Below, piece after piece: positions 1,614 to 64,000 of a stretch of 64,000 bases of DNA (the first letter of the stretch is position 1; every line of letters begins with the position of its first letter). Both the position numbers and the translations under genes were made by a program. A model generated the notes under the pieces. It had not been told where the DNA came from and made no database searches. It worked only from the letters and a program-made list of their open reading frames with translations. This DNA comes from Macrostomum lignano (Eukaryota): assembly GCA_002269645.1 (NCBI GenBank), contig NIVC01000290.1:16286-80285 (forward strand), given 5' to 3'.

Positions 1614-3433
1614 ATGCAGGCAGTGCAGGACCAAGTCGTTGCGATGCCATCAACTACAATGACTGAGACCCCCAGCACCGGAGCGCTGGTGACGCAGGTC
1701 CTGGCCGCGGCTGCCAGCGAGACCACAGCCCACGGGCTCAGCAGGCTAGCGGGCCAGAGGCCGCTCTACATCAAGCTCTGCTGGCTGCTGGCCTTCCTGG
1801 CCTTGCTCGCTGTGTTCACCTTCAGCATGCACGGCTTCACAAGCAAGCTCGTCAGAGGCGAAGTTAGCACTTCCTACGAGGCGGAGGCTGTGGACTTCCA
1901 GTTTCCCGATGTGTACTTCTGCAACAATGTCCAGGTGTCGGGCACCTACTCCATTACGCTCGCCAGCGAGGTCGTCGCCGAGATCAACGCCAAGATGACC
2001 GCCTCGTTCGCCACCTTCGATTCGGCGCTGCAACGGCTGCTCAAATCGTCGCTCACGAACGCCACCGAGTCTCAGATCGAGCAGATGAAGCTGCACAGAC
2101 TGAAGTCCGCCATCCAGTCAATGCCGTACAGCTTGCTGGTGGACCATCTCGCTCACAAGGAACAGCAGACGGTACTGAAGAATGACAGCAAGTCGGGCGT
2201 CTCCCTCAGACCCTTCTACCACCGAATCACCTCAAGTGTCTCAAGGTCGAGCTGACCGAGCAGAGACTCGCTGAGCTGAGCAAGGTCAACTTGGAGATCA
2301 GCTTCCAGTTCATTCTGGATCCGTACTTCACCGACTTTTATGTCGCATTGAAGATCTGGACGTATTCGCAGGTAATGAGCGTGACCGTCGCGCTGTACAG
2401 AAACCTGACTGCATACCAGGTCGACTGGGACCTGGACTCGCCCTACGAGATCGACAGGCCGATGGGAATGAGGCTGTACCTGGCTCCTCGAGGCGAGTAC
2501 CCGAGCAGGTTCGTGACCAACTTCCTGCTCGCTCCCGGCAGGTCCTACAGCATCGGGCTCAGCATGCAGAGCATCAAGAAGGAGCCCGAGGCGTACGGCG
2601 GACGCTGCCTGACGGAGGCTCCCGACGTGCAGTTCGTCAATCCGTACGACGGCTCGGCGTACGCGTTCGGCTACAGCAACAGCTTCTGCTACTTCTCAGA
2701 GTTCGCTCGGCAGCTGTCTGTGAACGGTAGCTGCAGTCCGTACGTGAACCCGCTGCCGTGGCAGTTCAGGCACCTGCGCTTCTGCCTGAATGCGAGCGGC
2801 CTGAACGAGTCTCAGATCGAGTCGAACCTCCTGCAGGCGTTCACAGCTGACACGGCCGCGCTGAGCGACTTCCAGCAGCTGTGCCAGAGCAGGCAGCTGT
2901 GCGTGTCACGAAAGTACGAGACCAGCACCTCCAGCGCGAACTGGCCCAACGAGAACGGGCAGATCCGGCTTGTCACGGACATCATGAAGCCCATCTTGGA
3001 TGGCTCTCCCAATGTATCGAGACCCGCTTGGAGTGCAATATATTCCAACATAATTTATTACCTTACAATAGGAGAGCCTGACATCTCTGCTGCAGAAGCT
3101 CTGGCCAGCAAGTTCTTCTCCCGCTCGGGCCTGGAGGTGACGCTGCGCAGTCAGCAGTCGCGCAGCTCGCAGATCCGGCTGTCGCCCGGCTACTCTCTGC
3201 AGACGTTCATCGCCGACATGGGCGGCACTGCGGGCATCTACCTCGGCTGCAGCCTGCTGAGCCTGTGCGAGCTCGTCGAGCTGCTGTACAACCTGATCGC
3301 CAAGACCCGAGGGCAGCGAAGCTCCAGCAACATCGTCCGCGTGAGGCCCGCGCCACCGACGGCCAGCAGCTCGGGCACGCCGGACTGCAGCGAGGTGGAG
3401 CTGGGCGACAAGACGGCCGAAAAGGCAGCTTGA
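1614..3433 (+). CDS. DEG/ENaC channel subunit, apparently single exon, one frameshift at ~2222
   Basis: ORF 1614..2255 has pre-TM1 TTAHG, TM1 and FPDVYFCNN. ORF 2291..3433 has the Cys-rich thumb and TM2 YSLQTFIADMGGTAGIYLGCSLLSLCE. Adding one C at 2222-2223 joins them as PFYHPNHLKC, matching the FxHPxYGNC motif. Confidence 0.9.
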
Positions 3434-12200: not shown

Positions 12201-12790
12201 GCATCCATCACATTGAAGTCGGCCCCGTGCCGCAGCAGCAGCGCCAGCAGTTCCGGATTCTCGCACAGGGCGGCAATGTGGAGCGGCGTGTTGCCACTTG
12301 CATTTTGCTTGTTGACGAACTCCGGGCCAGCCTTCACAACAAGTCGCGCCGCGTGACAGTCCTCAGCAAAGCAGGCCACGTGGAGCGCCAGATCACCGTA
12401 GGCATCCTCGAGGCTGCAGTCGGCATCGTGGCTCAGAAGCTCACGAACTATTTCCAGCTGCTTGGCTGCCACCGCCAGGTGCAGAGGCGTCTCCTTGGCC
12501 TGGTTGGTGGCGTTAACGTCGGCGCCGCGGTCCAGCAGCAGGCGCAGACAAGCAAGTTTATCGCTACGCGCGCACACGTGCAGCACCGAGTCCCCGTTGC
12601 GCGTCCGAGCTCCGATTTCAGCCCCAGCGTCCAGGAGCCGGCCCAGCGCGTCCAGAGAGCCTTCGGCGGCAGCAGCGTGAATCAGGCGACGACCGTTGGT
12701 GGCGTCGGCCAGGCCGTTTGGCGTTACTCCCGGTGATGCCATGAAGTCCGCCAGGGTGACCGTCGGCTCGTTCACTGCAAGATGGTCCAT
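9211..12790 (-). CDS. Ankyrin-repeat TRPM-like cation channel; exons 12790-10123 and 9881-9211, 1112 aa
   Basis: About 5.5 ankyrin repeats (ETPLHLA, GNTPLHIA); TRPM MHR4-like segment (LVMWAILTGR...NWYG); six TMs; pore FYTIVGEYG formed across phase-1 intron 9882..10122; LLLNVIVAMF; TRP box LWLFERY..LPAPLNIL; C-terminal coiled coil. Spliced length 3339 nt. Confidence 0.9.
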
Positions 12791-19284: not shown

Positions 19285-21941
19285 TCACATCCAGCCATTG
19301 ACTCCGCCGTCTGCGGGCAGCACGGGGTCCTCGCTATGGGACTTGGACTTGGGCAGCAGGTCCAGGCCGTCCAGGTCCAGGCCGAATAGGAACTGGCGCT
19401 GCTCGGACTGCGGCTGCTGTTTCTGCTGCTGCTGCCGGTGGTGCTGCGCCACCGAGTGCGCGTCCACCGAGTAGCGCCGGTCGGCCATCAGCTGCATCGG
19501 CGGCGGCGGCACCGAGGTTGGCGGAAGGCCGCCGAAGAGAACGCCGTCCCACACGGCTGGAGGCGGACCGCCCTCTTGCCAGAGCCGCTTCAACTCGGCC
19601 AGCGACTTCGCATCGGCGGAGGCGGCAGCGGCGGCGCCTTCATCAGCGGTCTGTTGGGAGAGCGCGGTTGCTATGGTGACGCTGGCCGGCGCGGAGCCGC
19701 GGCGCTGCGTGTCTTCGGCCTGTCTGCGCGCATGGAACTCGTGAACCAGCCGAGCGGCCTCTGGCGACGGCTCCAACTCGGGGTCCAGCCACAGGCCCTG
19801 GCAGCGCAGGCTGACATACTCGCAGATGAGCTGCTTGGCAAAGCGAACCCGCTCTCTGGTGCCGCAGATTGTGAAATGCGTCTGCGGCGACGGCAGGCCC
19901 GGGATCGATTCCTGCTTGCGCGGCGTGGCGATGTGCGTGTCAGACAGCTGCTGCACCCAGCGGATGGTCTGGCCAGAGGCGCCAACGATTAGGCCGACCT
20001 TGTCCTGCTCCACATACAGCCGGTCCTCGGTGCGGTTGGGCTCGATGCGGCTCAGGCGCTCCTGCTGCACCTTGCTGAAGTGCTCGCTCATCTGCAGGAT
20101 GATGCGCTTGGCCTGCAGTGGTGCGGGATGGACACGTCAGAGTAGGTCAGCATGAAGGGTGGCAAAGCAACAGCTAATGGCTACTAAGCAATTCACTGCA
20201 ACATACCTCGCCAAGTTTCTCAGGCATTCCAGTAATCTCAAACACTGGCAACTCGTCACGAGCTGGCGTCTTCACCCACACCTTGAGCTGCTCACGCAGG
20301 TGCCTGATTCTCTGGCCTAGAAGTGGCAAATAGAATAGGGTAGGATGAAAATGTAATTGATGAATGTTACATATCGATTCCAATGAATTAAAACATATTT
20401 TATTTCATTGGAATAAAAAAATGATGCATTGAAATTTAGATTTTTAAGTATGACTAGAGCTATCTTAGCAATAGACAGGGGCATAAGGAGGGGGGATAGG
20501 GGGATGCATCCCCCCAAAGAGCCTGACCAAAACTTTTTTGTTGCCCTTTGTTGCTATACATGCTACCATGTGACTGTCATAGCACTTACCTTGGTGTAAC
20601 CCCCCATAAAAATTCACCTTGGTGTATCCCCCTATAGTAAATTCCTGGCTATGCCTCTGGCAATAGATTATTATTTAGCTAGACAACGCTAGTAAATAAT
20701 AAAATCAAAATTAGACACATTTGCTTTAAAACTTATCAAACAAAAAGTTTACCATCAATTTAACTTCTTGCAATTTTTTGCAATATATAAATTGTTTTAA
20801 ATAAGATATATTGGCATATGTAAGTGTATATCATAACTTAGAAATTTTAAATATTTAGTATAGTATAATAAGCTTTTCTTAGTTAAAAAATCTATTTAGT
20901 TGCCTTTGTTAAACAGATATTTTATATTTTATCAAATCAATAATTCTAATAATCGATTAGGCTTTTAGAATAATAAATATATATATTACATAATTATAAA
21001 AAATATACCAGGTCTAAATATAGATAGTAGTGCAACTAGACTAAAGCATAGAGTATTAGAAGTAAATTCAATCATGTATTAAAAATATGGCTAAATCACA
21101 AATTTAAATATTTTAAAATTTAAATTATACTAATATTAATTAAACTATCAATATCATACATCTATATTTTTATAAATTATAACATAAGATCTATAAAATT
21201 TCAAGATAGAAAGTACTTACCATTCTTGCCAACAATCTCAGCAACATGATCTGATGAGGGTACTTGGATTCTTTCCGTCATAGTTAGTTTTGGTTCTTTA
21301 TTCTCTCCAATAGCAGAAGGGCTAATTGTAGCTGCCATTCTTTTTAAGAAATCTGATTGCATTTCTTCATCTTGCAATCCAAGTTTCATTTGCTCATCAA
21401 ATCGTCTTGTTAGCTCAGACATGGCGCATTGGTCCTTACTCTGTTGAGTTGGCTGAACTTTCTGGTCTAGGATAGAAGCAGATTGAATACAGTCAGCATT
21501 TCTTCCAGTGGCAGAAAACGAGAGTTCATTATCTAAGCGATTAGACAACAGTGAACGCGGCTTCTGCTTTTGATCAAATGCTTCGCCAGTCTTGAAAGTG
21601 GGACTGCCATTAGACAGCGAGCCCAATAACCACTGGCACTGATCTTTCCCAATGCCTGATCCATTGGTATTGTAGCACGACTTGAGCTCAGAAATAAACG
21701 CAGCTTGATCGGATCCACTTCCACTATTTGAGCGACGTGAAACCGACAATACGGAAGTTAAAGCGTCAGAATTTGACTCCGTCTTGGGCAAATCTGTTGT
21801 TTGCAATGCACTAAAAAAGTCGTCGGCCAACGAATATCTGCAATTCGACGACACAGGTGTGTTTGGTGAAAACGATGATAGACAACCATTGACAGAACCA
21901 GATGGGAACTTGAATGTGCTCTCAAGCACGGACTCAGACAT
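19285..21941 (-). CDS. mex3: MEX3-like RNA-binding protein with two KH domains, no RING; exons 21941-21221, 20316-20207, 20112-19285; 552 aa
   Basis: KH1 MTERIQVPSSDHVAEIVGKNG|GQRIRHLREQLKVWVKTPARDELPVFEITG closely follows MEX3 (VPSSEHVAEIVG..KTP..EPVF); KH2 KVGLIVGASGQTIRWVQQ. Intron phases are compatible; spliced length 1659 nt. Confidence 0.88.
20476..20659. mobile_element. hAT-type MITE (184 bp) in mex3 intron 1
   Basis: TIRs CAGGGGCATA / CAGAGGCATA; perfect 8-bp TSD GCAATAGA at 20468-20475 and 20660-20667. Confidence 0.85.
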
Positions 21942-23035: not shown

Positions 23036-24834
<1,799 letters not shown>

Positions 24835-31221: not shown

Positions 31222-32368
31222 AGTCACTGGGTGCTCTTTATTGGCTCACTGGGTGTTCCTTATTGGCTCACTGAGTGTTCCCTATTGGGTCACTGGGTGT
31301 TCCCTATTGGGTCACTGAGTGTTCCCTATTGGCTCACTGGGTGTTCCTTATTGAGTCAATGGGTGTTCCTTATTGGGTCACTGCGTGTTCCTTATTGGGT
31401 CACTGCGTGTTCCTTATTGGGTCACTGAGTGTTCCCTATTGGGTCACTGAGTGTTCCCTATTGGGTCACTGGGTGTTCCCTATTGGGTCACTGAGTGTTC
31501 CCTATTGGCTCACTGGGTGTTCCTTATTGAGTCAATGGGTGTTCCTTATTGGGTCACTGCGTGTTCCTTATTGGGTCACTGCGTGTTCCTTATTGGGTCA
31601 CTGAGTGTTCCCTATTGGCTCACTGGGTGTTCCTTATTGAGTCAATGGGTGTTCCTTATTGGGTCACTGCGTGTTCCTTATTGGGTCACTGCGTGTTCCT
31701 TATTGGGTCACTGAGTGTTCCCTATTGGGTCACTGAGTGTTCCCTATTGGCTCACTGGGTGTTCCTTATTGAGTCAATGGGTGTTCCTTATTGGGTCACT
31801 GCGTGTTCCTTATTGGGTCACTGCGTGTTCCTTATTGGGTCACTGAGTGTTCCCTATTGGCTCACTGGGTGTTCCTTATTGAGTCAATGGGTGTTCCTTA
31901 TTGGGTCACTGCGTGTTCCTTATTGGGTCACTGCGTGTTCCTTATTGGGTCACTGGGTGTTGCTTATTGGGTCACTGGGTGTTCCTTATTGGGTCACTGG
32001 GTGTTCCTTATTGAGTCAATGGGTGTTCCTTATTGGGTCACTGCGTGTTCCTTATTGGGTCACTGGGTGTTCCTTATTGGGTCACTGGGTGTTCCTTATT
32101 GAGTCAATGGGTGTTCCTTATTGGGTCACTGCGTGTTCCCTATTGGGTCACTGGGTGTTCCCTATTGGGTCACTGGGTGTTCCCTATTGGGTCACTGGGT
32201 GTTCCCTATTGGGTCACTGGGTGTTCCCTATTGAGTCACTGGGTATTTCTTATTGGGTCACTGGGTGTTCCCTATTGGGTCACTGGGTGTTCCCTATTGG
32301 GTCACTGGGTATTTCTTATTGGGTCACTGCGTGTTCCTTATTGGGTCACTGGGTTCCTTATTGGGTCA
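31222..32368. repeat. 22-bp minisatellite (GGTCACTGGGTGTTCCCTATTG)n
   Basis: Read directly; variant units recur in higher-order blocks. Confidence 0.95.
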
Positions 32369-33736: not shown

Positions 33737-36700
33737 TCAGCTGCCCGCATTCTGCGGCCGCCTCCGCCGGCGTCGCCGCCTCCGCAGCAGCCGGGCGATG
33801 GCGTGCCGGAAGTCCTGATTGAAGACGGTGTACAGCACCGGGTTCAGCGCGCTGTTCGCGTAGCCCAGCCAGATGGCCAAGAACTGGACAGCCTCCAGCA
33901 CCGCAGACGGCGGCTGGTCGCCGCCCGACGATTCGTTGCTGGTGACGCCGCGGACTAGGTACATCAGCGTGAAGGGCATCCAGCAGACGATAAACACCAC
34001 GACGATGGCCAGCATGCGCTGGGTAGCCCGCTGCTCCCGGAGGTCCGCTCGGCGAGGTCCCCGACGGTTAAGCGATAGCGGCTCGGCTGCCGTGGCGGCC
34101 TCGTGCGCCTCCTCCTCCAGCTGTGGCGCCACCGCCGCCGCCGCCGCCGCCGTGGGGTTCTCCAGAACGCAGGGCTCGTCGCCGGCCTCCGCGGCAGCTT
34201 CGCCATCGTCGTCAGCGACTGCTTCCTCGGTGGCGCTGCGGTTGTCGGCGATGGTTGGCGCCGGCAGCACCGTGGCCAGGTCGAGCTCGCGGTCGAACCA
34301 GACGCCGCTGGGCTGGTTCAGCTGCCGGTGCTGCTGCAGTCGGCGCTTGCGCAGGCAGCGAGCCCGCCGGCGCAGCAGGTGGAAGATCCGGGCGTACAGC
34401 ACAACTAGGATGAGCAGCGGCAGGATGAAGCTGCCAGTTGCCGAGTAGATCACGTAGTTCGTCTCCTTAAACAGGTCGCAGGTGACGCGGCCGTCCCAGC
34501 TGGAGTTGGCGGCTCGCACCGGCACCAGAGAGCGGCCGAGCTTGGCCGCCGGGTCAACGAACTCGCGGCCGTCCCAGCCGATGAGTGGCGGCAGGCAGAT
34601 GAGGCAGCTCAGCAGCCACACCAGAACCGAGTAGGCGACCGCCCGGCAGCGGTGCTGCTTCTCGCGGTACCACAGCGGGCAGACGGTGGCTGTAAACCGG
34701 TCGAAGGCGATGGCCACGAGGCTCCACACGGAGGCGGTGCAGTAGAGCACATCCAGGCTGAGCCACAGGTTGCACAGCACCGGGCCGAACTGCCAGTGGC
34801 CTGCGGTGGGCAATGCGGAGTGACGTCACTTTCGGTGAGGAATGCGGAATGACGTCACTTTCGGTGAGGAATGCGGAATGACGTCACTTTCGATGAGGAA
34901 TGCGGAATGACGTCATCACTTTCGGTGAGGAATGCGGAGTGACGTCACTTTGGGTCAGGAATGCGGAATGACGCCACTGGGTGAGAAGTGCATAGCGTCG
35001 AGAAATACAAAGCAATTCACATTGACGTCCATTGACGGTTAGGTTAGGAATTTTTGTGCCATGACTGCTGCCGAAGCATACATAGTGACATCACTACAGG
35101 TGAACTCCATCTCGCTCCTTTCCCTTTCGTTTATTCAACACCGTAGAGTTTCAGCTTAACAGTTGCAGTCCCGTGAATATGGCTGGCTGCCTCAGCTTGC
35201 GAAAATCTTCCTATTATCTCTTTGCACTTTTATGGGACTATTCTTTGAGTAAACCACTTTGAGTAAAGCCGCTCATTTGCATTCCAGTTTCTGATTGGAT
35301 TCTGCCATAGTTTGTGTTTTATCCCGTTTTATCCCAAATCTGCATTTCCTAAAAGTTGTGAAAGTGCGACGCTTTGGGTCTGCGCCTGCCCTCCTTTGAT
35401 GCATATGCGATCCCCACCCGGACACTGTCCCACCGACAGTTGCTCCCCCACCCGGACACTGTCCCACCGACAGTTGCTCCCCCACCCGGACACTTTCCCA
35501 CCGGCACTGATCCCCACCCGGACACTGTCCCACCGGCATTGATTTCCACCCGGACACTGTCCCACCGGCACTGATCCCCACCCGGACACTGTCCCACAGG
35601 CACTGATCCCCACCCGGACACTGTCCCACCGGCACTAATCCCCACCCGGACACTGTCCCACAGGCACTGATCCCCACCCGGACACTGTCCCACCGGCACT
35701 GATCCCCACCCGGACACTGCCCCACCGGCACTGATCCCCACCCGGACACTGTCCCACCGGCACTGATCCCCACCCGGACACTGTCCCACCGGCACTGATC
35801 CCCACCCGGACACTGTCCCAACGGCACTGATCCCCACCCGGACACTGTCCTTCCGGCACTGATCCCCACCCGGACACTGTCCCACAGGCACTGATCCCCA
35901 CCCGGACACTGTCCCACCGGCACTGATCCCCACCCGGACACTGTCCCACAGGCACTGATCCCCACCCGGACACTGTCCCACCGGCACTAATCCCCACCCG
36001 GACACTGTCCCACAGGCACTGATCCCCACCCGGACACTGTCCCACCGGCACTGATCCCCACCCGGACACTGCCCCACAGGCACTGATCCCCACCCGGACA
36101 CTGTCCCACCGGCACTGATCCCCACCCGGACACTGTCCCACCGGCACTGATCCCCACCCGGACACTGTCCCAACGGCACTGATCCCCACCCGGACACTGT
36201 CCTTCCGGCACTGATCCCCACCCGGACACTGTCCCAACGGCACTGATCCCCACCCGGACACTGTCCTTCCGGCACTGATCCCCACCCGGACACTGTCCCA
36301 CCGGCACTGATCCCCACCCGGACACTGTCCCACAGGCACTGATCCCCACCCGGACACTGTCCCACCGGCACTGATCCCCACCCGGACACTGTCCCACCGG
36401 CACTGATCCCCACCCGGACACTGTCCCACAGGCACTGATCCCCACCCGGACACTGTCCCACCGGCACTGATCCCCACCCGGACACTGTCCCACCGACAGT
36501 TGCTCCCCCACCCGGACACTGTCTCACCGGCACTGATCCCCACCCGGACACTGTCCCACCGGCACTGATCCCCACCCGGACACTGTCCCACCGGCACTGA
36601 TCCCCACCCGGACACTGCCCCACAGGCACTGATCCCCACCCGGACACTGTCCCACCGGCACTGATCCCCACCCGGACACTGTCCCACCGGCACTGATCCC

Positions 36701-39700
36701 CACCCGGACACTGTCCCAACGGCACTGATCCCCACCCGGACACTGTCCTTCCGGCACTGATCCCCACCCGGACACTGTCCCAACGGCACTGATCCCCACC
36801 CGGACACTGTCCTTCCGGCACTGATCCCCACCCGGACACTGTCCCACCGGCACTGATCCCCACCCGGACACTGTCCCACAGGCACTGATCCCCACCCGGA
36901 CACTGTCCCACCGGCACTGATCCCCACCCGGACACTGTCCCACCGGCACTGATCCCCACCCGGACACTGTCCCACAGGCACTGATCCCCACCCGGACACT
37001 GTCCCACCGGCACTGATCCCCACCCGGACACTGTCCCACCGACAGTTGCTCCCCCACCCGGACACTGTCTCACCGGCACTGATCCCCACCCGGACACTGT
37101 CCCACCGGCACTGATCCCCACCCGGACACTGTCCCACAGGCACTGATCCCCACCCGGACACTGTCCCACCGGCACTGATCCCCACCCGGACACTTTCCCA
37201 CCGGCACTGATCCCCACCCGGACACAATCATCCCCGCACAGAAAGGCGGCCCTTCAGGCCTTGCAGCGGCCGGACAGGAGCTGAAAAGCCCGCAGCAGCC
37301 TCTCCCGCCGCACAGGGCAGGTCAGCGGGCCGCCCCAGCTGAGCAGTCTCAGACCGCAATTGACTGTGACAGTTTTATTGCCCCACCCACCGCCTCGTCT
37401 GGCCAGCCTCATCTTCGCGGCTCCATCAACTTGGCCAGCATCCTCGCAGCTACGAATTTCAAGTCTTTCTGCATCTTCCCAGCATCCCACCGGCCTCATC
37501 CCCGGTTGCGGATTCGCACAGCTCTGGGGAGGACTTTAATCGCAAGAGCTGCTGCAGAAAAGATTGATGACCGCCGGGTCAGATCAGGCTGAGCTCGAGA
37601 GTCCTGAGAATTTGCATTTTATTTAGAGATGAAAAATGAGCGAGATGGAAAGTTTTCAAATTTCGCAGGAAGCAGTGCTGGAAATGCTATTTTTGTCCCA
37701 CGGCAGAATTATTTTTTGTTTGAGAGAAAATGTGACATAATTCGTATTGAAATCATCCGAATAAATAATAACCGAACATTCCCGAACGCTAAAATTACCC
37801 AAATCAAATAATTCCCCAAGCCAAAAATTCCTCTTCGAATGCTGTCCCCTTCGAATGCTGTCCCCTTCGAATGCTATCCCCTTCGAATGCTGTCCCCTTC
37901 GAATGCTGTCCCCTTCGAATGCTGTCCCCTTCGAATGCTATCCCCTTCGAATGCTGTCCCCTTCGAATGCTGTCCCCTTCGAATGCTATCCCCTTCGAAT
38001 GCTGTCCCCTTCGAATGCTGTTCCCTTCGAATGCTGTTCCCTTCGAATGCTGTCCCCTTCGAATGCTGTCCCCTTCGAATGCTGTTCCCTTCGAATGCTG
38101 TTCCCTTCGAATGCTGTCCCTTAAGTGCCGTCTGACATCCCGGCCAGGAATCCCAGCCACTCGCCCCCGGCCCAATTTGCATAAGTCCGTTGGGCAGCGC
38201 TCCCACGGGGAGCCGGGAGGTGAGGGCGGCAGCTGGGGGGGGGGCAATCAGGCGGGTCAGCGCGGGTCGGAGGGCCGCCAGCCGTGGGGAACACAAAATC
38301 TGCGGCCATCCGGCCAGCCCGGACACTTTCCCCGGCCACTTCTTTAACTCGGCCTTCTGTGGTCAAAATATCCCGAGCATTGGCGCGACCGCTTCCAACC
38401 AATTTGGGCCGCCTATTTCTGGCCAGCCCTCTGAACAACTTCGAATTTGAGCAGCTCTGCTTTTGGGACATGTTTTACCGAAGTGGCGCTTCCGGTTCTC
38501 GGAGGGCTCCGCCATCTCGGCTGAGCAAACTCACAGCAAGGATTAGCGGCGCTGGGATCAGACTGGGGATGAGCGAAATGGCCTCACAAACTTTTATTGC
38601 TCATCATCTACTCAGCTGCAGACTGGCAGCTGCGGACTCAGCTGATCGCTGCTCACGCCTGATCCGGACTTTGATGGGGCTCCTCAGGATCACTGAGTCC
38701 CCACCTCATCTCTGCTCAGCTTACTTTCTGTCTGGCTCACCCTCCTCTCCATCTACTCTCTGCCTGTCTCACCCTCCTCTCTATCTACTCTCTGCCTGTC
38801 TCACCCTCCTCTCCATCTACTCTCTGCCTGTCTCACCCTCCTCTCTATCTACTCTCTGCCTGTCTCACCCTTTTCTCCATCTATTCTCTGCCTGTCTCAC
38901 CCTCCTCTCCATCTACTCTCTGCCTGTCTCCACCTCCTCTCCATCTACTCTCTACCTGTCTCACCCTCCTCTCCATCTACTCTCTACCTGTCTCATCCTC
39001 CTCTCCATCTACTCTAATTTCTGCCTGTCTCACCCTCCTCTCCATCTACTCTACTTTCTGCCTGTCTCACCCTCCTCTCCATCTACTCTCTACCTGTCTC
39101 ACCCTCCTCTCCATCTACTCTCTACCTGTCTCATCCTCCTCTTCATCTAATCTCTGCCTGTCTCACCCTTTTCTCCATCTATTCTCTGCCTGTCTCACCC
39201 TCCTCTCCATCTACTCTCTGTCTGTCTCACCCACCCCGCGATCTACTCTCCGCTTGTCTCATATCTCACTCCCTTCAATATACTCTGTTCTAATCTTCTC
39301 GTCTCCTTCACCCACCCTCTCCCTGTCTCACCCACTACTCCATCCACGCACACAATCCAGTCTGGTTCATTTCAGGTCAAACCGATTGCCGCAGGCGGTG
39401 TTTGCTCAGGCGGCTGCGCACTTCTTTGAGTGGGCGGAAATACGACTCAGGGAATGTTCTTGGTGTAAGGAACGAGATTCGAAGACGGCGCTGGGTCTTA
39501 GAGACATCGAAATGTTTTATAGTACAGTGCTACATTTGAATAATTTGTCAAAGTACGACAGCTGGGTGTGGAATTCACGATGGCCCTGAGCACTCACTCA
39601 CTCACACACTCACTCATTCACTCAGTCACTCATTCACTCACTCACTCATTCACTCACTCACCCATCACGGCATTCACAGAGGACAATGGCAGCACAGTGA

Positions 39701-42244: not shown

Positions 42245-49258
<7,014 letters not shown>

Positions 49259-50063: not shown

Positions 50064-51415
50064 ATGTCAACAACCATGGAAAGCGCACGCGCACTAACAG
50101 CCAGACAGCTCAGAGCAGAGCTGACCAAGCGCGGTCTACCAAAAACAGGCTGCAGACAGCAGCTCTACGAATGGCTATGTGCCGCCACTTGCAGTCTGAA
50201 GCTCCTGCAGCCGACTCTGACAGCTCCGGCGCGACTCTTGATGCAGGAGTCATCGGTGATCAGTCAGCAGGTGGGCACAAAGGGACGAGGGGCGGCTGGC
50301 GACCTGGTTGCTCTACGGAAACAGGTCGAAGAGCGCAGGTGCGCAGGTGTCGAGAGCGGTCAGTCGGCCAGCAAGCGCAGCCGGGCCGACCTGATCCGAG
50401 ACTTTGTCAATCCCAACGCCAGTCAGTCAAGCGATAGTCTTACCGCCTGCATGGAGAACGGCAACTTGGTGTTCAAGAGCAGCCGCCAAGCCTAAGCAAG
50501 ATTTCCACCGGCCAATGGATCTATGGCAATGCTCAAATCCTACAGCGCCTGATCTTCTGGGGCTACCTGCTGTACTCCCAGAAGATCGGCGAACTCCTTG
50601 ACGCCAACTACAGCCCAAACGTTGTGTGGGAGTTTGACGAAAACTACAGGAAGCTGGTGGCCGAGTCGGACCTGCATCAGTGGGGTGCGAACCCACGCAG
50701 CTGTACCATCGCCACCTGAACGCTCCACGCAATCTGAAGGTCACTTTGAACCGACCCGGTATCTCGCAGCCGCAGGCGCCCGTTTGTTTGCCTGAGCTTC
50801 AACTCACCAGCCGGCTGTCAACGGTCCAGCTGCAGGTACCGGCACGTCTGCAAGCTGCCTGGCTGCGGCAAGCCGCATCCCGCCCAGCTGCATTGTCAGA
50901 GCAGCGATGTGGCGGAGGGGTCAAAAAACTAGATTTATTTAGCCACCATGCTTTTATCTCCCACCCGCCCTCATCCCATTGTTTGCATCCCCTACCCCTG
51001 CCCGCCACCCCGACCCGCCTCCCCACCGCATCGGGTGCTGTCTTCTGACATGAACCTGGCTTCTTGAAATATTCTGCTCCACATTGGTCCAGACGAGAGA
51101 TTCCTCCGAAACGGCCTTCATAACGGCTTCGGCCTCATCAACAAGCCTCCGCCTGCCTTCACGCATTCTGCCAACTACCGTTCTGCTACTGACCATGACA
51201 GCAGGTCACAAGCAACTCTCCGAAGAGCTCCGCTAGCGCACGCGTCATGGTGAATGCTATCGACGCGATTCTCAAGTCTGACGGCAGCGTTCGGTTCATT
51301 CACGATCTGTCCAGTCATTTCGGCTCTTCGGTCAACGACAGCTATGAGCAGGAGCGGAGTCTGAGATTCTACTACGTGCAGGATCTGCTGCGTCACATCC
51401 GGCCCGGCTCGCTCA
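50064..51415 (+). mobile_element. Truncated DIRS-order (Ngaro-like) retrotransposon: frameshifted ORF1 (SAP-like N-terminus, gag-like core, CCCH/CCHC fingers) and RT N-terminus
   Basis: SAP-like LTARQLRAELTKRGLPKTG; ISTGQWIYGNAQIL..YSQKIGELL..VWEFDENYRKL..WG; CLSFNSPAGCQRSSCRYRHVCKLPGCGKPHPAQLHC ending at TAG ~50931; RT start ERFLRNGLHNGF..NYRSA and AILKSDGSVRFIHDLS..SVND. No recombinase ORF or terminal repeats were seen. Confidence 0.78.
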
Positions 51416-52080
51416 TCGTCCTATCGTCCCATCGTCCCATTGTCCCATTGTCCCATCGTCCCATCGTCCCATCGTTCCATCGTCCCATCGTCCCTTCGTC
51501 CCATCGTCCCATCGTCCCATCGTCCCATTATCCCATCGTCCCATCGTCCCATCGTCCCATCGTCCCATCGTCCCATCGTCCCATCGTCCCATCGTCCCTT
51601 CGTCCCTTCGTCTCATCGTCCCGTTATCCCATCGTCCCATCGTCCCGTTATCCCATCGTCCCATCGTCCCATCGTCCTATCGTCCCATCGTCCCATTGTC
51701 CCATCGTCCCATCGTCCCATCGTCCTATCGTCCCTTCGTCCCATCGTCTCATCGTCCCATCGTCCCATTATCCCATCGTCCCATCGTCCCATCGTCCCAT
51801 CGTCCAATTATCCCATCGCCCCATCGTCCCATCGTCCCATCGCCTCATCGTCCCATCGTCCCGTTATCCCATCGTCCCATCGTCCTATCGTCCCTTCGTC
51901 CCATCGTCTCATCGTCCCATCGTCCCATTATCCCATCGTCCCATCGTCCCATCGTCCCATCGTCCAATTATCCCATCGCCCCATCGTCCCATCGTCCCAT
52001 CGCCTCATCGTCCCATCGTCCCATTATCCCATCGTCCCATCGCCCCATTGTCCCATCGTCCGCGAAAATTGTCCCATCGG
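51415..52080. repeat. 8-bp repeat (CATCGTCC)n
   Basis: Read directly; begins where the DIRS-like RT stops. Confidence 0.94.
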
Positions 52081-56588: not shown

Positions 56589-57009
56589 TGTAACGGTTTG
56601 GAAATTCTGTAATTCAAATCTAGTTTATTAACATGGTGTATTTTAACTTTATTCAAATCCTTAGCTGTTTAGATTACGTGCGTAATTATTCTAGGGTTTT
56701 AATATTACGTATTTTGTTAATTTGGTTTCCGTTTCCAAGAAATGCGACTCATAATTTTAACATGTAAGTTCTAGTCTTTTTCTGTAAGCGTGTGGCAGCC
56801 TGGGACGTAGATCAACCTAGCATGTACGTGAGATACAATAATTATAATCAGAGCCGATCACCAGTGTACGCATTCGTACTAAGACAGTAAGATTTCTTAT
56901 GCTCCGAGTATAGTAAATCGTCCCGGACTGACAGACATATCTGCTGAACCATATACGTTGCTAATACTCTCTCTTCGCTAGTAATATTAAATATACCGGA
57001 CTCGTTACA
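56589..57009 (+). repeat. Putative 5' LTR (421 bp)
   Basis: Starts TGTAACG and ends CGTTACA (7-bp inverted termini, TG..CA), followed by a PBS. No second copy is in the window to confirm it. Confidence 0.75.
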
Positions 57010-57015
57010 TCAATT

Positions 57016-57028
57016 TGGAGGTCCCACC
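57016..57028 (+). promoter_or_regulatory. Primer-binding site, probably tRNA-Gln
   Basis: TGGAGGTCCCACC is complementary to the 3' end of eukaryotic tRNA-Gln as I recall it (GGTGGGACCTCCA); it lies 6 nt after the LTR end. Confidence 0.75.
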
Positions 57029-57635: not shown

Positions 57636-60600
57636 ATGTCTGTAGAGCAATCAGCCACTGGAACTCAAGGCGCACCTCTGGTGGGTGAACCCATAAAGCT
57701 GCCTGAGACTGAGAAGGCTCAAAATGAAGCCGAGTTAAACCTAATTGCTACTGAGAGTAGCGTGGGTGCTATTTTAGGAAGTCTTGACAGAACGCTGGGC
57801 AACTTGGATGCTAAGCTTGACTATGCGAGAGTGCCTGAGGCAAAGCTGAAAGCCCCACCTTGCTACCACCCTAAAATCAGATTTGAGCTCTGGGAGACAC
57901 AACTCCGGGCCTATTTAAGCGTTAACAGAGTTCAGCGGGAGCACTGTGGCGGTGTTATTTTCTCTCTACTATCGCCAGAAGTCCAAGAGTTTTACTACAA
58001 TAGCAAACTACAGGATCTAGCTTTTCCAGCAGCATTAGAAGCTCTCCGCGAGCGGTACACGGACTCTAGCAGTGCCGATAAATTTTACATTGAGCTGACA
58101 GTTGCCCACCAAGCTGATGGCGAAGGAATTCAAGAATTCTGTGACCGTCTTGTAGCCCTAGCCACCGCAGCTAAAATTTCTGCTCCACACAGCGATCCAT
58201 TGGTTCGGTCACGTTTTTGTTATGGAGTTCTAGACAAAAATCTAGCTGAGAAACTAATTACAATGACCCAGGAGTCACCCAAAGCAACCCTTCAAGACCT
58301 CCTGAAGAAAGCCAAAAGTTTTCTAGACATTCAGAAGCTGCTGAAACCGACTGAGACAAGCAAGATCCGGCAGTTAGAAGTAGACGAGATAAGCCGACTC
58401 AAAAACAGGATCCAAGAACTTGAGACAGAAGCCAAGCAGAGGGGCAAGTTCGAACACGAATTTAATAGCCAGCCTACTGGGGGATTTAGACCACAGGCTT
58501 TGCACACTGCCACTGATAAACCACCGAGGTACAATGCGCCTATCACGGGCAGGCACGCAGGCAAGCGGCACTGCTTCAGGTGCGGTTCAGCTGATCACCT
58601 GGTAGCAGAGTGCCCTGGCTCAGGTGCACCTGAAAACGGTAAATTTTCATGGCGCCACCCGAGGCAGCCCACACAGAAAGGCTCAGCTAAAGTGGAAAAA
58701 GAGCTGGGTAGAATTTCCTACTGGTCAAATGCCTACGGATTCATCCAGTCTCTGCCTCTGGGAGATTCTGTTTTCGTACACTTCTCGCAGCTCAGCAGCG
58801 AGTTAAAGGATCTTGTCCCCGCCCATCAGATTGTCGGAGCGCCCGTAGAGTTTATCCGGCTAGCCGACAAGGGCAAGAAAAACGACCGTGCTGTTGATGT
58901 TGTGTGTAGTAACCAGGATGTCCGGTGCAGCCAAACCGTGTCTAGGGCAGAATCCTCCAGCTCCGGGTACTACCTGCAGGCCACTGTGGGAGACATTAAG
59001 CTGATTGGGTGTCTAGATAGTGGTTCAAATGCGTCCATCATCAGCCCAGAAATTCGGGACAAACTGTTAGCAGCCGATCCTATCAATAATCGCTTCACGG
59101 CCGCAACTACAGTGCAGTCAGCTTCGGGATTCAATGGTGCCTCCAGTCGAATCCTTGGCAAGTTAGTTTGCGAGGTTCAAGTAGCGAATGAGACAAAGCC
59201 GCACGTTTTCCTAGTCATAGAACACTCGATCTCCGACACTCTCTTTGGGATCGACTTCATGCGGAATTTCCAGATTAATTTATTGGTGGCAGAGGGTCGA
59301 GCGACGGCTGGAGGTGAGCTTATTCCTGTCATCGAAGGGGACAGTAGCATCTTCCAAGTCAAGAGAGTGCTGCGGCTTGCAATGTCGAACTCCCGCCCAG
59401 GTCGGAGACTCTAATCCCTGGGAGGGTGATAGACAGTCAGCCTAACACCTGCGGCTCCGTGGGTGGCAAGATTTTTGCGAACGACTCGAGCCTCTTAATG
59501 GCACACTCGGTAGACCAAGTAAACAGTTCCAATCACATCTTGCTGCGGGTCTAAACACCAGTGAAGAACCAGTATCACTCAGAAGAGAAGATGAAATAGG
59601 ATCCTTCCAGCAGTTGGGGCCAAACGAGACAATCAGTAAAACTTCAATTTCTGAAAAAGACTTTAAAATCGAAAACACTGATCAGCTCCTTAGAAAACTC
59701 AATCAGCTGCCTAGTCCAGATGAAGGTACAGCGAAGTGGCTATCAAACCAGTTTCGCCTAACGGAGTCCAAACTCAGCGAGGAACAGTTGGGAACTACAC
59801 TGAAAATGCTTAACTATTTCTTAAGTCAAATCTCTCGTAGTGAGCACGATATCTCGAGAACCCAATTGCATGAACTAGCTATCGAACTGAAAGACCCTAG
59901 CTGTAGGCCGATCACGCAGCCATCACGCCGCACCACCCCGGCTCAAAAAGATTTCCTTGACAAATATATAGAACAGCTAGTGGAGCAGGGCATAGTAGAA
60001 GAGTGTGATTCCGAGTGGGCCTCACCAATTGTCTTAGTCAAAAAGAAGGACCAGTCTTACAGAATGTGTGTTGACTACAGAGCGGTCAACAAGCTAATAA
60101 AGCCGTGTAGCTTTCCGCTCCCATTAATGGATGAAACGTTTGATAGCCTTGCCGACTCTACCATCTTTTCAACACTAGATTTAACAAGTGCATACTGGCA
60201 GGTAGGAATTAGAGAGCAAGACCGAGACATTACGGCTTTTTCTTGCCCCCAGGGCACATTCCGTTGGCGAGTTGTGCCATACGGTATCAAAACGGCACCA
60301 TCTAACTTTGCTAAGCTGATGCACCGTGTGCTCAAACCCTTGCTGATGAGAGTTAGCCTCGTCTATCTTGACGACGTCATTATCAAAGCTCGAACTAGTA
60401 GCGAAATGATAACAAACCTAGCGCTGGTGTTTTGGCAACTACAAAAGGCAAACCTAAAAATTAAGCCAGCTAAATGCGAGCTTTTCAGGGAAAAACTAAA
60501 GTTTTTAGGATTTGTAGTATCGGCGGATGGAATCGAGACGGACCCCAGCAAAACAGAGGCCGTCCAGAGTTGGTGTAGGCCAAAGACAGGGAAACAACTC

Positions 60601-63035
60601 TTGTCATTCTTAAATTTTGCCAACTATTACCGTAAATTTGTGCCAAAATTCTCGATCATAGCAGCTCCACTGTACGCTATCGCTAACTCCGATAGGTTTC
60701 ACTGGGAAGAAAAGCACGAAGAAGCTTTCAAACAGTTAAAGGACAGTCTCTGCAATCCTCCAACTCTGGCGTACCCGGATATGCGTCCAGAAGCCGGCCC
60801 CTTCGTGCTAGACTGTGACAGCTCTGGCCTGGGGTGGGAGGAGTCCTGTCCCAAGTTGGCAAAACTGGTAAAGAGCATGTGATAGCATTCGCTTCGAAGA
60901 AGTTCAACAATGCACAAAGAAATTATTGTGCAACAATGCGCGAGCTGCTCGGTTTGATTATCATGCTAGAGCAGTTCCGCACTTACCTCTTAGACAGGCC
61001 TTTCGTCGTCCGAACTGACGCCGTGGCGCTTAAATGGCTTCATTCCAAAAAACACGCTACGGGAATGCTAGCCCAGTGGCTTGTGATCCTAGAGCCTTAC
61101 AACTTTAGCGTTGAGCAGACGCCGCTGGAACGCTTGGCAGACTTTGACTTCTCCGTGGAACATAGGCCTGGGGAGAGCCACATTAATGCCGACATTCTCA
61201 GTCGCAATCCCAAATTCCGTCCGGACCATTTCGACTGCCCATCTTGCTCTCGTATTCCAGAGTTTCAGGCCAGGTTCGGATGCCAAAGTAGCGCCGTTAG
61301 AGCCGTTAAAATAGGCTGTGCTAAATTAGAAAAGCACGAGGCTTCGACTCAAACCGAAGGTACACACTTTTTAGATCAACCAACCATGTGTGAACCCACT
61401 AGGAATGATGACCACGGCAATGAGAGCCGGCTTGATAGTTGTCACTCAGTTAGCCAAGCGATCCAGACTGATCCATCAGGCACAAACCATAAAGAAACCT
61501 CTGAAGATAGCCAAATTCAAGTGACAAAACCTAAGGTTCAGGTGGCTAAAATTGCAACTAATTCTAACAATGACCAAAGTGCGAAGAGTGACAGAACGAG
61601 CGGTAGTCATTCCTTCCACATTGGAACCAGCCTAGCGAATCAAGCCGCTGATGATGCAAGCGAATTAAGCCTACCACAGAGTGAGGCTGATGAGAGAGTA
61701 GATGTGGATTGGGTGACGCTGGCACAAGAGTCAAACGTAGATCTGCTGAGAATCAAGCAATCCGTAGCTGGCTCCGAACCGAAACTTAGCAAACAGGATA
61801 TTCAAGATTGCAGTCGAGAAATTAAAACTCTCTGGGCTCTGTATAACGAACTGTCAGTTGAAAATGGCTTGCTCTACCGCACAAAGCCAGCGAGGAAGGG
61901 CAAACCGAGTGTTAAGCAGTTGATAATTCCCTCGTCTGCAAATTTAGATGAACTAGTAATCAAGTACCATAGAGCGTGCAACCATTCAGGAGCCAATAAA
62001 ACCACGGCGGCATTGAAGGCACGTTTCTTGATCTTTGATCTGGAAAATTACGTAAGAAGTATCGTTGCCGAATGCGAAACTTGCGCCAGAGTTAAGAAAG
62101 GTACAAAGAAGATTAGAGCCCCCCGCAGCCTACCTTGGCAGGGTATCCCAATCAGGTGGTACACGTTGACCATTGTGGATTTTCCTGAATCTAATGGTAT
62201 GCGGTATCTTCTGGTGCTGATTGATCGTTTCACCAGCTTCGTCGAGATTGTCCCGGTGCCTGATGTCTCAGCAGGAACTACGGCGCTAGCCATCCTCACT
62301 GAATGGGTGGTAAGGTATGGGACGATGGAACAGATTGTCTCAGATAACGCACTGCATTCATTAACGCTACGGTTGCCGAGTTGACTCGAATACTCGAAAT
62401 CGACATGGTTAGAATCACAGCGAGAAGACCACAGGCCAATGGCAAGGCCGAACGAGCTATCCAAACGATCAAAACCAAAGTTCGGGCAGTGTGTGCTGAT
62501 CGTAGAATAGGGTGGCCTTTGGCTGCTAAGCTTGTGGGTTGTCGATCCGGACGACCGAATCCGAGTCTACCGGCTTCACGCCAGCAAAGTTTTCTTCGGG
62601 AGAGAACTCGACATCCCCTTGGACCTCCAGTACAACCCACCACCAAGAGAATACTATGATCCGGAATCTTACGCACACACCCTGCACAAAGCCCTGGTCG
62701 AAACATCGGCTACGGCTCGCGCTTTGCGGGGAAAGGCCCAGAGAAGACAAAAGCGCTACTATGACAGAGCCGTTTTTAAACCTAACTTTGAAGTAGGTGA
62801 GCTGGTCTGGGTTCGAAACCCGGATCACAGAGGCCTTGACCCAGCAGTTTGGTTGGGACCATACCGCGTAGTTCAGCAAATATCCGAGCGCAACTATCGG
62901 CTCCTGCCCGAATTTATTAGAGAAAATCCATTCATTCGAACTCCTAACCCGAGCCACAACATTTATAATGTAGACAGAATCAAAAAATGCATACGCAAGC
63001 CGAACTATCAGACACCATTGACCGTTTCGGTCTAA
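57636..63035 (+). CDS. Gag-Pol polyprotein (gag, CCHC knuckle, cold-shock-like domain, protease, RT, RNase H, integrase), split by single-base indels
   Basis: CFRCGSADHLVAEC (58572-58613); LDSGS (59013-59027); RT WASPIVLVKKKD..RMCVDYR, LDLTSAYWQ, YLDDV; RNase H LDCDS, YCATMRELL, VRTD; integrase H..H..CETC, VDH/SDN/QANGKAER, WLGPYRV; stop at 63035. Confidence 0.92.
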
Positions 63036-63163: not shown

Positions 63164-63330
63164 CAGGTGCAGTCCAGTGAGAACCAGGTGCAGTCCAGTG
63201 AGAACCAGGTGCAGTCCAGTGAGACCAGGTGCAGTCCAGTGAGAACCAGGTGCAGTCCAGTAAGAACCTGGTGCAGCCTGGTGAGAACCAGGTGCAGTCC
63301 GGCGAGAACCAGGTGCAGTCCAGTGAGAAA
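63164..63330. repeat. 21-bp tandem repeat (CAGGTGCAGTCCAGTGAGAAC)n in the 3' region of the LTR element
   Basis: Read directly. Confidence 0.9.
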
Positions 63331-64000
63331 CGGTTGCAGCCGGTGAGACTTCGGTGTGTACAGGTGGAACCCAAGGACAACCGGTTGAGGACCTTGGTCA
63401 GCCAGTTTTGGACCTGTTGCAACCCAGAACAGAGTCTGGAGATTTTGTGCAGGAGCCAGATTTTTAAGTGAAAAACACACTCAACACCGTGTGCCTGAAG
63501 TAGGTGGTAATAGTAGCACGAATCGACTCGAACAAGTCGAGGATGGCCAGGTTCCTTCAATCGGTGCGGAGGTAGAGATAGTGGGAGATAGAACGCGTGA
63601 GTTGCCTGGAACCGCCAGCCAAGGACAGAGGACGGAGCCAGCTGGCCAGCGTGAAACAGTGGAACCAGACCCATCGTTATCAGACAGAGTCAGTACTCGG
63701 GTAGCATTTACACCACTCGAAGTGGCAGGGCGGTTCGGCCGCCAACCAGATTTTTGCAGGTGCTTGCCGGGTTTTGCCACCGCTCCAATTCCAACAGTCT
63801 TTGATTTCCTTCTCTTTCCCTCCATTCGTTGTGTTGTCTGCTTTGTTCTCTTCTTCCTTTTCTGTTCTTTGTTTTCCGTGCCAGTGCCAAGTTAGCCCTG
63901 AGTCTGCCGGTTGCGTTGCCGCCGGTGGGTTGTGTGTGTGTGGGGCGGCGTCCCGTCCGTGTGTTGGCTGGGTGAGCTCTGCTGCGCAGTTCGAATTGAA

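What the first reader, a model, noticed from the sequence alone, without database searches (positions are those of the whole stretch)
58572..59030. Ty3/Gypsy Gag-Pol carrying a cold-shock domain between the CCHC knuckle and the protease
Seen: within one uninterrupted ORF, ~58701-58910 encodes ELGRISYWSNAYGFIQSLPLGDSVFVHFSQLSSELKDLVPAHQIVGAPVEFIRLADKGKKNDRAVDV. It has RNP1-like AYGFI and RNP2-like VFVHFS at cold-shock-domain spacing, followed by G..VEF....GK..A..V. The pattern resembles the CSDs of CSDE1/UNR, Lin28 and Y-box proteins. It lies 30 aa after CFRCGSADHLVAEC and ~35 aa before LDSGS. Established: CSDs are single-stranded nucleic-acid chaperones, and CSD plus CCHC knuckle is the Lin28 module, here in reverse order. 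I know of no LTR retrotransposon with this domain. Inference: a captured host domain aids tRNA annealing, strand transfer, packaging or translation, or interferes with small-RNA silencing.
Basis: partly seen in the sequence, partly recalled or inferred. Interest (0 to 1): 0.88.

Follow-up and report, generated by a model that had tools for sequence, protein, structure and literature searches.

The report
Cold-shock domain inside a retrotransposon Gag
A family of Ty3/Gypsy jumping genes, otherwise found only in the flatworm Macrostomum lignano and one unidentified sequencing run, carries a genuine, conserved cold-shock RNA-binding domain in its capsid protein, an add-on I found no report of, although the copy in this window is itself dead.

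Summary
Residues 355-423 of the Gag-protease ORF (nt 58698-58904) form a real cold-shock domain (CSD). It matches Pfam PF00313 at about the curated cut-off (27.4 bits against 27). A family profile hits only CSDs in the PDB. AlphaFold gives a five-stranded barrel (pLDDT 91.6) whose best structural match is CSD1 of Drosophila UNR (TM 0.77-0.81).

It is not a one-off. Two Macrostomum lignano families, one with 100%-identical LTRs and an almost uninterrupted gag-pro-pol ORF, carry the same domain at the same site. So does a fourth element from a Logan assembly (SRR31628435). Across families the CSD is as conserved as the Gag core and protease (43-51% identity), while both flanking linkers have drifted (12-26%). 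Thirty-nine more distant Gag or protease relatives lack it.

The nearest cellular relatives are UNR/CSDE1 CSDs, CSD1 best. Lin28 did not appear.

The window copy is decayed: pol has about five frame breaks and the 3' LTR lies beyond the window.

The most likely function is inferred, not shown: an extra single-strand nucleic-acid chaperone or packaging module in the nucleocapsid region. No paper describing a CSD in an LTR-retrotransposon Gag turned up. I rate it a new variant of a known kind, of moderate to high specialist interest.

The parts
56960..57009 (+). 3' end of the 5' LTR (...CTCGTTACA). The LTR start was not determined, because the 3' LTR lies beyond the window end.
   Evidence: Aligns with the end of the 629-bp LTR of the M. 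lignano element L001 (...TTCGTCACA). No LTR pair was found in the window.
57016..57028 (+). Primer-binding site TGGAGGTCCCACC
   Evidence: The same motif, TGGARGTCCCACC, sits at the equivalent place in L001 (5269) and L002 (574). It occurs once in the window.
57636..59414 (+). Gag-CCHC-CSD-protease ORF, 592 aa. The C-terminal ~12 aa and the stop codon result from a frameshift.
   Evidence: About 40% identical over aa 67-586 to M. lignano P0001 and P0002.
57882..58355 (+). Gag core (capsid-like), aa 83-240
   Evidence: 43% identity to each M. lignano family (52% between the two). Weak Gag-like hits across animals.
58569..58616 (+). Single CCHC zinc knuckle (nucleocapsid), aa 312-327
   Evidence: Pfam zf-CCHC E=0.003, which is below the curated cut-off, but the CX2CX4HX4C pattern is invariant in all relatives.
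58698..58904 (+). Cold-shock domain, aa 355-423. Predicted strands: b1 355-364, b2 367-372 (RNP1 YGFI), b3 378-382 (RNP2 VFVHF), short helix 388-393, b4 403-409, b5 418-424.
   Evidence: Pfam PF00313; PDB profile hits; AF2 pLDDT 91.6; Foldseek to UNR CSD1, TM 0.77/0.81; motif alignment with Csp, YB-1 and UNR.
58974..59369 (+). Aspartic protease, aa 447-578, with DSG at 59016-59024
   Evidence: Pfam Asp_protease 26.6 bits (cut-off 26). 45-48% identity to the M. lignano relatives.
59372..59551 (+). PR-RT linker, read in a different frame (two frame breaks, near 59385 and near 59500)
   Evidence: tblastn of the near-full-length M. lignano polyprotein P0042, and three-frame translation.
59479..60834 (+). 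Reverse transcriptase and the start of RNase H, in a third frame
   Evidence: Pfam RVT_1 E=3.8e-35. 63% identity to P0042. Best PDB relative is Ty3 RT 4ol8, E=2e-58.
60831..63011 (+). RNase H, a variable spacer and integrase. A frame break at about 60832 precedes it. Within the integrase core the reading moves into another frame between about 62375 and 62540, and the original frame carries two in-frame stops there.
   Evidence: Pfam RT_RNaseH, Integrase_H2C2 and rve.
63164..63348 (+). 21-bp tandem repeat (about 9 copies) in the region downstream of pol

Best explanation
The window holds a decayed copy of a Ty3/Gypsy (Metaviridae) LTR retrotransposon. Its lineage was otherwise found only in the flatworm Macrostomum lignano and in one unidentified sequencing run.

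Before its four known families diverged, this lineage acquired a single cold-shock domain. The domain is most like CSD1 of the cellular RNA-binding protein UNR/CSDE1. It sits in the Gag polyprotein between the one CCHC zinc knuckle and the protease, and it has been kept under purifying selection.

Shown: the domain is real, it folds as a CSD barrel, it keeps the RNP1 ([YF]GFI) and RNP2 ([VL]F[VF]H) nucleic-acid-binding motifs, and it is conserved like the essential Gag and protease domains.

Inferred: after protease processing it is part of, or next to, the nucleocapsid protein. There it would act as a second single-strand RNA/DNA-binding chaperone alongside the knuckle. It could help select or package genomic RNA, anneal the tRNA primer to the PBS, melt RNA structure and support strand transfer during reverse transcription. 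This would parallel the CSD-plus-knuckle pairing in Lin28 and in plant CSD proteins.

In the window copy itself the domain is a relic, because pol is broken.
For: Domain identity:
- Pfam CSD at or above the cut-off in the window's isolated segment, and matched by all three members scanned at E<=1, best 4.1e-9.
- PDB profile hits are essentially all CSDs (one sub-threshold exception), led by UNR CSD1 at 5e-7 and 1.6e-6.
- AF2 pLDDT 91.6; Foldseek best 4qqb_X, TM 0.77/0.81.
- Signature residues are invariant across the transposon, UNR, Csp and YB-1 domains.

Lineage conservation:
- Present at the same site in P0001 and P0002 (M. lignano) and in L002 (Logan assembly).
- CSD identity is 43-51%, against 12-26% in the adjacent linkers.
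- pN is 0.34-0.45 in the CSD, compared with 0.35-0.46 in Gag core and PR and 0.51-0.65 in the linkers.

Recent activity of CSD-bearing elements:
- L001 LTRs are 100% identical and L003 LTRs 99.4% identical, each with a long ORF that includes the CSD.

Acquisition rather than ancestral Gag:
- Thirty-nine more distant Gag or PR relatives have no CSD.
- No reverse-transcribing virus protein matches the fold in BFVD.

Element class.
Against: - No functional data of any kind. RNA binding, protease cleavage sites and the mature protein that carries the CSD are all unknown.
- Synonymous sites are saturated (pS about 0.8), so selection is inferred from regional contrast, not from a proper dN/dS.
- The structure model rests on a 3-sequence alignment; the single-sequence model was poor (pLDDT 38).
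- Only four families are known, so the breadth and age of the lineage are poorly sampled.
- UNR CSD1 also mediates protein-RNA regulatory complexes, so a regulatory role rather than a chaperone role is not excluded.
Confidence: 0.6

Rival explanations
1. Host-factor mimicry or translational control. The UNR-CSD1-like domain acts not as a general chaperone but as a specific regulator. It would bind purine-rich elements in the element's own or host mRNAs, or compete with or recruit partners of host UNR/CSDE1, to drive translation or stabilise the transposon RNA.
For: The closest relatives are specifically UNR/CSDE1 CSDs, CSD1 best in both fly and human. From established knowledge, UNR CSD1 is the main RNA-recognition domain in the SXL-UNR-msl2 complex, and CSDE1 is an IRES trans-acting factor. 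The lineage uses one gag-pro-pol ORF, so it might benefit from unusual translational control.
Against: The location inside Gag next to the knuckle and before PR fits a virion or nucleocapsid component. There is only one CSD, whereas UNR works through many. The margin of UNR CSD1 over other CSDs is modest (about 6-12 bits). No partner-binding surface was tested.
Confidence: 0.15
2. Counter-defence. The CSD sequesters or remodels small-RNA precursors or targets, or shields transposon RNA, to blunt piRNA or siRNA silencing.
For: Only the general precedent that Lin28-type CSDs bind small-RNA precursors, and that flatworm Gypsy elements such as Burro capture host regulatory domains (PMC6431247).
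Against: No Lin28 chain appears among the PDB hits at E<=1. Nothing in the sequence points to small-RNA pathways. Purely speculative.
Confidence: 0.05
3. Domesticated gene. The intact 592-aa Gag-CSD-PR ORF in the window is a host-co-opted Gag-like gene, and the broken pol is irrelevant.
For: Gag-PR is open while pol has about five frame breaks.
Against: The ORF's end is itself a frameshift artefact. The PBS and the LTR end are still recognisable directly upstream. Pol remains 47-63% identical to active relatives and is contiguous. No orthologous solo Gag gene was found in the 1.84-billion-protein search. A 1.8-kb ORF surviving in a young dead copy is unremarkable.
Confidence: 0.04
4. Not a real feature: a chance RNP-like motif, or an exon picked up by one copy or an assembly chimera.
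For: In the whole-ORF context the Pfam score (21.8) is below the cut-off. The single-sequence AF2 model was poor.
Against: Four independent families from three sources carry the domain in the same place. Profile, fold and motif evidence all agree.
Confidence: 0.01

Closest known systems
UNR / CSDE1 cold-shock domains, especially CSD1 (PDB 4qqb, 6y6m, 1wfq)
   Same: Best sequence match (E=5e-7 and 1.6e-6) and best structural match (TM 0.77-0.81, 31-32% identity). Shares the E-x-G-x-I ... YGFIQ ... LF[FV]H-SQ pattern and the short b1-b2 loop, which distinguish UNR CSDs from Csp and Y-box domains.
   Different: One domain rather than five canonical plus four non-canonical CSDs. It is embedded in a retrotransposon polyprotein. 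It has a 5-residue longer b3-b4 connection and keeps a Trp or Phe at the end of b1, as bacterial Csps do.
Lin28 and plant CSD-zinc-knuckle proteins (e.g. AtGRP2/CSP)
   Same: A CSD combined with retroviral-type CCHC knuckle(s) in one nucleic-acid-binding or chaperone protein. The AtGRP2 CSD is a weak profile hit (E=0.002).
   Different: The order is reversed (knuckle, then CSD). There is a single knuckle and a ~29-aa linker. No Lin28 chain matched at E<=1. The resemblance is architectural, not evidence of descent.
Ty3/Gypsy elements with captured accessory domains: chromoviruses (chromodomain), orchid AlkB-Gypsy (PMC9289625), planarian Burro (PMC6431247)
   Same: An LTR retrotransposon lineage that fixed a host-type domain and kept it through diversification. 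Burro shows that flatworm Gypsy polyproteins accept in-frame host domains.
   Different: The domain here is a CSD in the nucleocapsid region of Gag. It does not appear in the text of either paper. The element is of ordinary size (about 9 kb in M. lignano) with no extra ORF.
Canonical Ty3 / retroviral nucleocapsid (CCHC knuckle chaperone)
   Same: Same position in Gag, and the same expected job: RNA packaging, primer annealing and strand transfer.
   Different: Ordinary nucleocapsid proteins rely on one or two knuckles plus basic residues. None is known to me to contain an OB-fold or CSD.

Membership tests
Cold-shock domain (Pfam PF00313, CSD/OB-fold) | Profile match at or above the curated threshold | tested here: met
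   27.4-27.5 bits against a cut-off of 27 on the isolated domain. Relatives reach E=4.1e-9. In the whole-ORF context the score is 21.8 bits, below the cut-off.
Cold-shock domain (Pfam PF00313, CSD/OB-fold) | Five-stranded antiparallel beta-barrel | tested here: met
   AF2 pLDDT 91.6 with five strands. Foldseek TM 0.64-0.81 to about 50 solved CSDs. This is a prediction, not an experiment.
Cold-shock domain (Pfam PF00313, CSD/OB-fold) | RNP1 (K/x-G-F/Y-G-F-I) on b2 and RNP2 (V-F-V-H-F) on b3 with exposed aromatics | tested here: met
   AYGFI and VFVHF in the window. [YF]GFI and F-x-H are invariant in all four families and aligned with Csp, YB-1 and UNR.
Cold-shock domain (Pfam PF00313, CSD/OB-fold) | Binds single-stranded RNA or DNA | not testable with these tools
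   Needs EMSA, anisotropy or NMR with recombinant protein.
Ty3/Gypsy LTR retrotransposon (Metaviridae) | Pol order PR-RT-RNase H-integrase, with the RT closest to Ty3-type RTs | tested here: met
   Pfam order. The PDB best hit is Ty3 RT 4ol8 at E=2e-58, against caulimovirus at 3e-40 and retroviruses at about 1e-30. The clade within Ty3/Gypsy was not determined, because no RT phylogeny was run.
Ty3/Gypsy LTR retrotransposon (Metaviridae) | Flanking LTRs, PBS and Gag with a CCHC knuckle | tested here: inconclusive
   In the window only the 5' LTR end and the PBS are visible, and the 3' LTR is off the end. The relatives L001 and L003 have full LTR pairs at 100% and 99.4% identity. The CCHC knuckle is present.
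UNR / CSDE1 protein family | Tandem array of multiple CSDs (five canonical plus non-canonical) in a cellular protein | tested here: not met
   A single CSD inside a Gag-Pol polyprotein. The relationship is at domain level only.
Lin28 family | N-terminal CSD followed by two CCHC knuckles, with a Lin28-type CSD sequence | tested here: not met
   Reversed order and one knuckle. No Lin28 chain among the PDB hits at E<=1. Pfam Lin-28A-like knuckle E=0.18.

The most novel reading that the evidence does not exclude
The CSD is a captured copy of host UNR/CSDE1 CSD1 that the element uses as a molecular mimic. It would recognise the same purine-rich RNA signals or partners as host UNR, in order to commandeer translation or mRNA stability, or to escape RNA-based silencing. 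That would make it a retrotransposon-encoded regulator of host post-transcriptional control rather than a simple nucleocapsid helper.
Probability: 0.12. Interest if true: 0.85.

Novelty: new variant of a known kind. Interest (0 to 1): 0.62.

Why it matters
Stable gain of a host protein domain by an LTR retrotransposon is considered rare (PMC9289625). Each known case, such as the chromodomain or AlkB, has revealed a step of the replication cycle or of host-element conflict.

A CSD next to the nucleocapsid knuckle would be an independent, natural re-invention of the 'CSD + CCHC knuckle' RNA-chaperone module seen in Lin28 and in plant CSPs. That gives a direct test of what limits RNA packaging or reverse transcription in a cold-blooded host.

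The system is tractable. M. lignano has young, apparently intact copies, transgenesis is available (PMC5730564), and its LTR elements respond to stress (PMC12801592).

The case also shows that automated annotation misses the domain. Precomputed Pfam hits for the M. lignano proteins list no CSD, so similar captures may be under-counted.

Tried and rejected
- The search for homologous proteins returned nothing in all three searches: whole Gag-PR, the Gag-PR alignment and the CSD alignment. Yet P0001 and P0002 are in the collection, so this is a limit of the word index, not evidence of absence.
- Scans of metagenome contigs (two) and of IMG/VR (one) found no relatives.
- The single-sequence AlphaFold model was uninformative (pLDDT 38).
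- Searches for the 3' LTR, or any LTR pair, in the window failed. Insertion age could therefore not be estimated.
- Exact look-ups of four host-type window ORFs found nothing, so the source species stays unidentified. It is an animal, and a Macrostomum-like flatworm is a guess from the element's relatives and the repeat-rich DNA.
- P0001 has no DNA on record.
- Nei-Gojobori counts are saturated at synonymous sites, so only regional contrasts are used.
- A Lin28 origin, chance similarity, a single-copy chimera and a domesticated gene were considered and rejected, or rated low, for the reasons given under the rival explanations.
- Seven literature searches and text searches within four papers found no prior report. 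Repbase, Dfam and GyDB could not be consulted.

Full report
**1. The observation**

ORF 57636-59414 (+) encodes 592 aa. It contains the quoted peptide, a CCHC knuckle (aa 313-326) and an aspartic protease with DSG at aa 461-463.

- Pfam finds Asp_protease, zf-CCHC and CSD (PF00313) in this ORF. The downstream ORFs carry RVT_1, RT_RNaseH, Integrase_H2C2 and rve.
- On the isolated 78-aa segment the CSD score is 27.4 bits (E=3e-6; curated cut-off 27). Within the whole ORF it is 21.8 bits.
- phmmer against all PDB sequences returns only cold-shock proteins. Drosophila UNR CSD1 (4qqb) is best at E=0.0018.

**2. Relatives**

An exhaustive phmmer search of 1.84 billion representative proteins gave only two strong relatives:

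- P0001, E=2e-111.
- P0002, E=4e-98.

Each aligned in one stretch across aa 67-586, which includes the CSD. Both are Macrostomum lignano proteins: A0A1I8FZ33, and PAA72364.1 with six sequences at least 90% identical to it. Both keep the CSD at the same position.

A weak fragment hit, P0018, led to a Logan contig (SRR31628435, locus L002). It encodes a fourth, about 42%-identical Gag-CCHC-CSD-PR-RT element.

The other 39 hits are Gag-only or PR-only relatives from oyster, Caenorhabditis and unnamed assemblies. A family HMM finds no CSD in any of them. Metagenome and IMG/VR scans found nothing further.

**3. Is it a true CSD?**

- All three first-found members match PF00313, best E=4.1e-9.
- A four-sequence profile against the PDB gives UNR CSD1 of fly (5e-7) and of human (1.6e-6), then other UNR/CSDE1 CSDs. 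After those come AtGRP2, bacterial Csps and Y-box proteins at about 2e-3 to 1e-2. No Lin28 chain appears.
- AlphaFold2 with the three-sequence alignment gives pLDDT 91.6 and pTM 0.81, with the order b1-b2-b3-short helix-b4-b5. The single-sequence run was poor but had the same strand order.
- Foldseek against the PDB returns CSDs almost exclusively. Best is 4qqb_X (E=1.8e-6, TM 0.77/0.81, 31% identity), and human UNR CSD1 reaches TM 0.78.
- In the viral structure library only phage Csps and giant-virus S1/eIF2-alpha folds match, and no reverse-transcribing virus.
- An alignment with CspA, CspB, YB-1 and UNR CSD1 shows invariant G (b1), G-F-I (RNP1), F-x-H (RNP2) and G-x-x-V-x-F (b4). The aromatic before the RNP1 G-F-I (Y or F) and the b5 A-x-x-V are kept wherever the sequences extend that far.

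**4. Conservation**

| Region | Identity between families | Non-synonymous differences per site, pN |
|---|---|---|
| CSD | 43-51% | 0.34-0.45 |
| Gag core | 43-52% | 0.36-0.46 |
| Protease | 45-63% | 0.35-0.37 |
| Linkers directly flanking the CSD | 12-26% | 0.51-0.65 |

- The CSD is therefore conserved like the Gag core and protease, while both flanking linkers have drifted.
- Synonymous sites are saturated (about 0.8). This is a regional contrast, not a formal dN/dS.

**5. Activity of the lineage and state of the window copy**

- In M. lignano, L001 has 629-bp LTRs that are 100% identical and a gag-pro-pol ORF of 1791 aa with one late frameshift.
- L003 has LTRs 99.4% identical and a 1767-aa ORF that includes the CSD.
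- CSD-bearing elements were therefore active very recently.

The window copy, by contrast, is broken:

- The Gag-PR ORF ends through a frameshift.
- The PR-RT linker, the RT and the RNase H-integrase part lie in three different frames.
- The integrase core makes another frame excursion, and the original frame has two in-frame stops there.
- The 5' LTR end and a PBS (TGGAGGTCCCACC, 57016-57028) are recognisable and are shared with L001 and L002.
- The 3' LTR lies beyond the window.

The RT's best solved relative is yeast Ty3 RT at E=2e-58, which confirms the superfamily.

**6. Mechanism**

- Shown: a conserved CSD with intact nucleic-acid-binding motifs lies in Gag, downstream of the only zinc knuckle and upstream of the protease.
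- Inferred from established CSD and nucleocapsid biology: it provides an added single-strand RNA/DNA-binding chaperone or packaging activity in the nucleocapsid region. I put this at about 0.6.
- Alternatives: UNR-like regulatory mimicry (about 0.15), counter-silencing (about 0.05), a domesticated Gag gene (about 0.04) and an artefact (about 0.01).

**7. Comparison with known systems, and novelty**

- The domain belongs to the CSD family. All testable features are met.
- The protein is not a UNR/CSDE1 or Lin28 family member. The array and order features are not met.
- The element is a Ty3/Gypsy member with an accessory domain, comparable in kind to chromoviruses, AlkB-Gypsy (PMC9289625) and planarian Burro (PMC6431247).
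- Neither paper's text contains 'cold' or 'CSD'.
- The M. lignano LTR-retrotransposon study does not mention the domain (PMC12801592).
- Full-text searches found no report.
- Repbase, Dfam and GyDB could not be checked.
- Verdict: a real, conserved and apparently undescribed variant of a known kind.

**8. Host context**

- The window is animal DNA, with DEG/ENaC, ankyrin-TRP, KH and GPCR ORFs.
- It is full of minisatellites.
- Its species could not be identified.

Noticed in passing
window 3975-52061 (e.g. 35409-37225, 23359-24457, 31223-32368, 45481-46703, 51414-52061): The window is unusually dense in long, well-preserved mini- and microsatellite arrays. TRF reports 40 rows with score >=200, for example a 32-bp unit x56, CTGT x274, a 22-bp unit x52 and a 19-bp unit x64. 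Several create long spurious ORFs, such as 35349-37217 with odd Pfam hits.
   Followed up: partly
window 2291-3433 (+), 10055-12790 (-), 19285-20091 (-), 33737-34813 (-): Host-type animal ORFs: a DEG/ENaC (ASC) channel fragment, a 911-aa ankyrin-repeat TRP-like ion channel in a single ORF, a KH-domain protein and a rhodopsin-type GPCR. Exact look-ups of the two that were tried (the TRP-like channel and the KH protein), plus two other window ORFs, found no identical protein in the public collection, so the species is unidentified.
   Followed up: partly
window 57016-57028; L001 5269-5281; L002 574-586: All three elements with DNA in hand share the primer-binding site TGGARGTCCCACC a few bases after the LTR end, although Gag identity between them is only about 40%. 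The cognate tRNA was not identified.
   Followed up: partly
L002 (Logan SRR31628435), about 3200-3215: In this fourth CSD-bearing element the protease active-site triplet reads D-P-G instead of D-S-G, and gag has a frameshift near 2045-2106. This copy is probably also defective. The source organism of the run is unknown.
   Followed up: no
window 63164-63348; L001 5318-5812: Tandem repeats lie inside the elements' untranslated regions: a 21-bp unit x9 downstream of pol in the window, and a repeat array in the 5' leader of the M. lignano element.
   Followed up: no
window 60834-62384 (aa ~120-370 of that ORF); P0002 aa ~1240-1440: A long (~250 aa), poorly conserved, low-complexity spacer lies between the RNase H end (...YRPG..H..AD.LSR) and the integrase zinc finger in all family members. 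Its function is unknown.
   Followed up: no
L001 and L003 gene tables: Precomputed Pfam annotation of the M. lignano polyproteins lists protease, RT, RNase H and integrase but no CSD. Routine annotation therefore misses this domain, because it scores below threshold in whole-protein context.
   Followed up: yes
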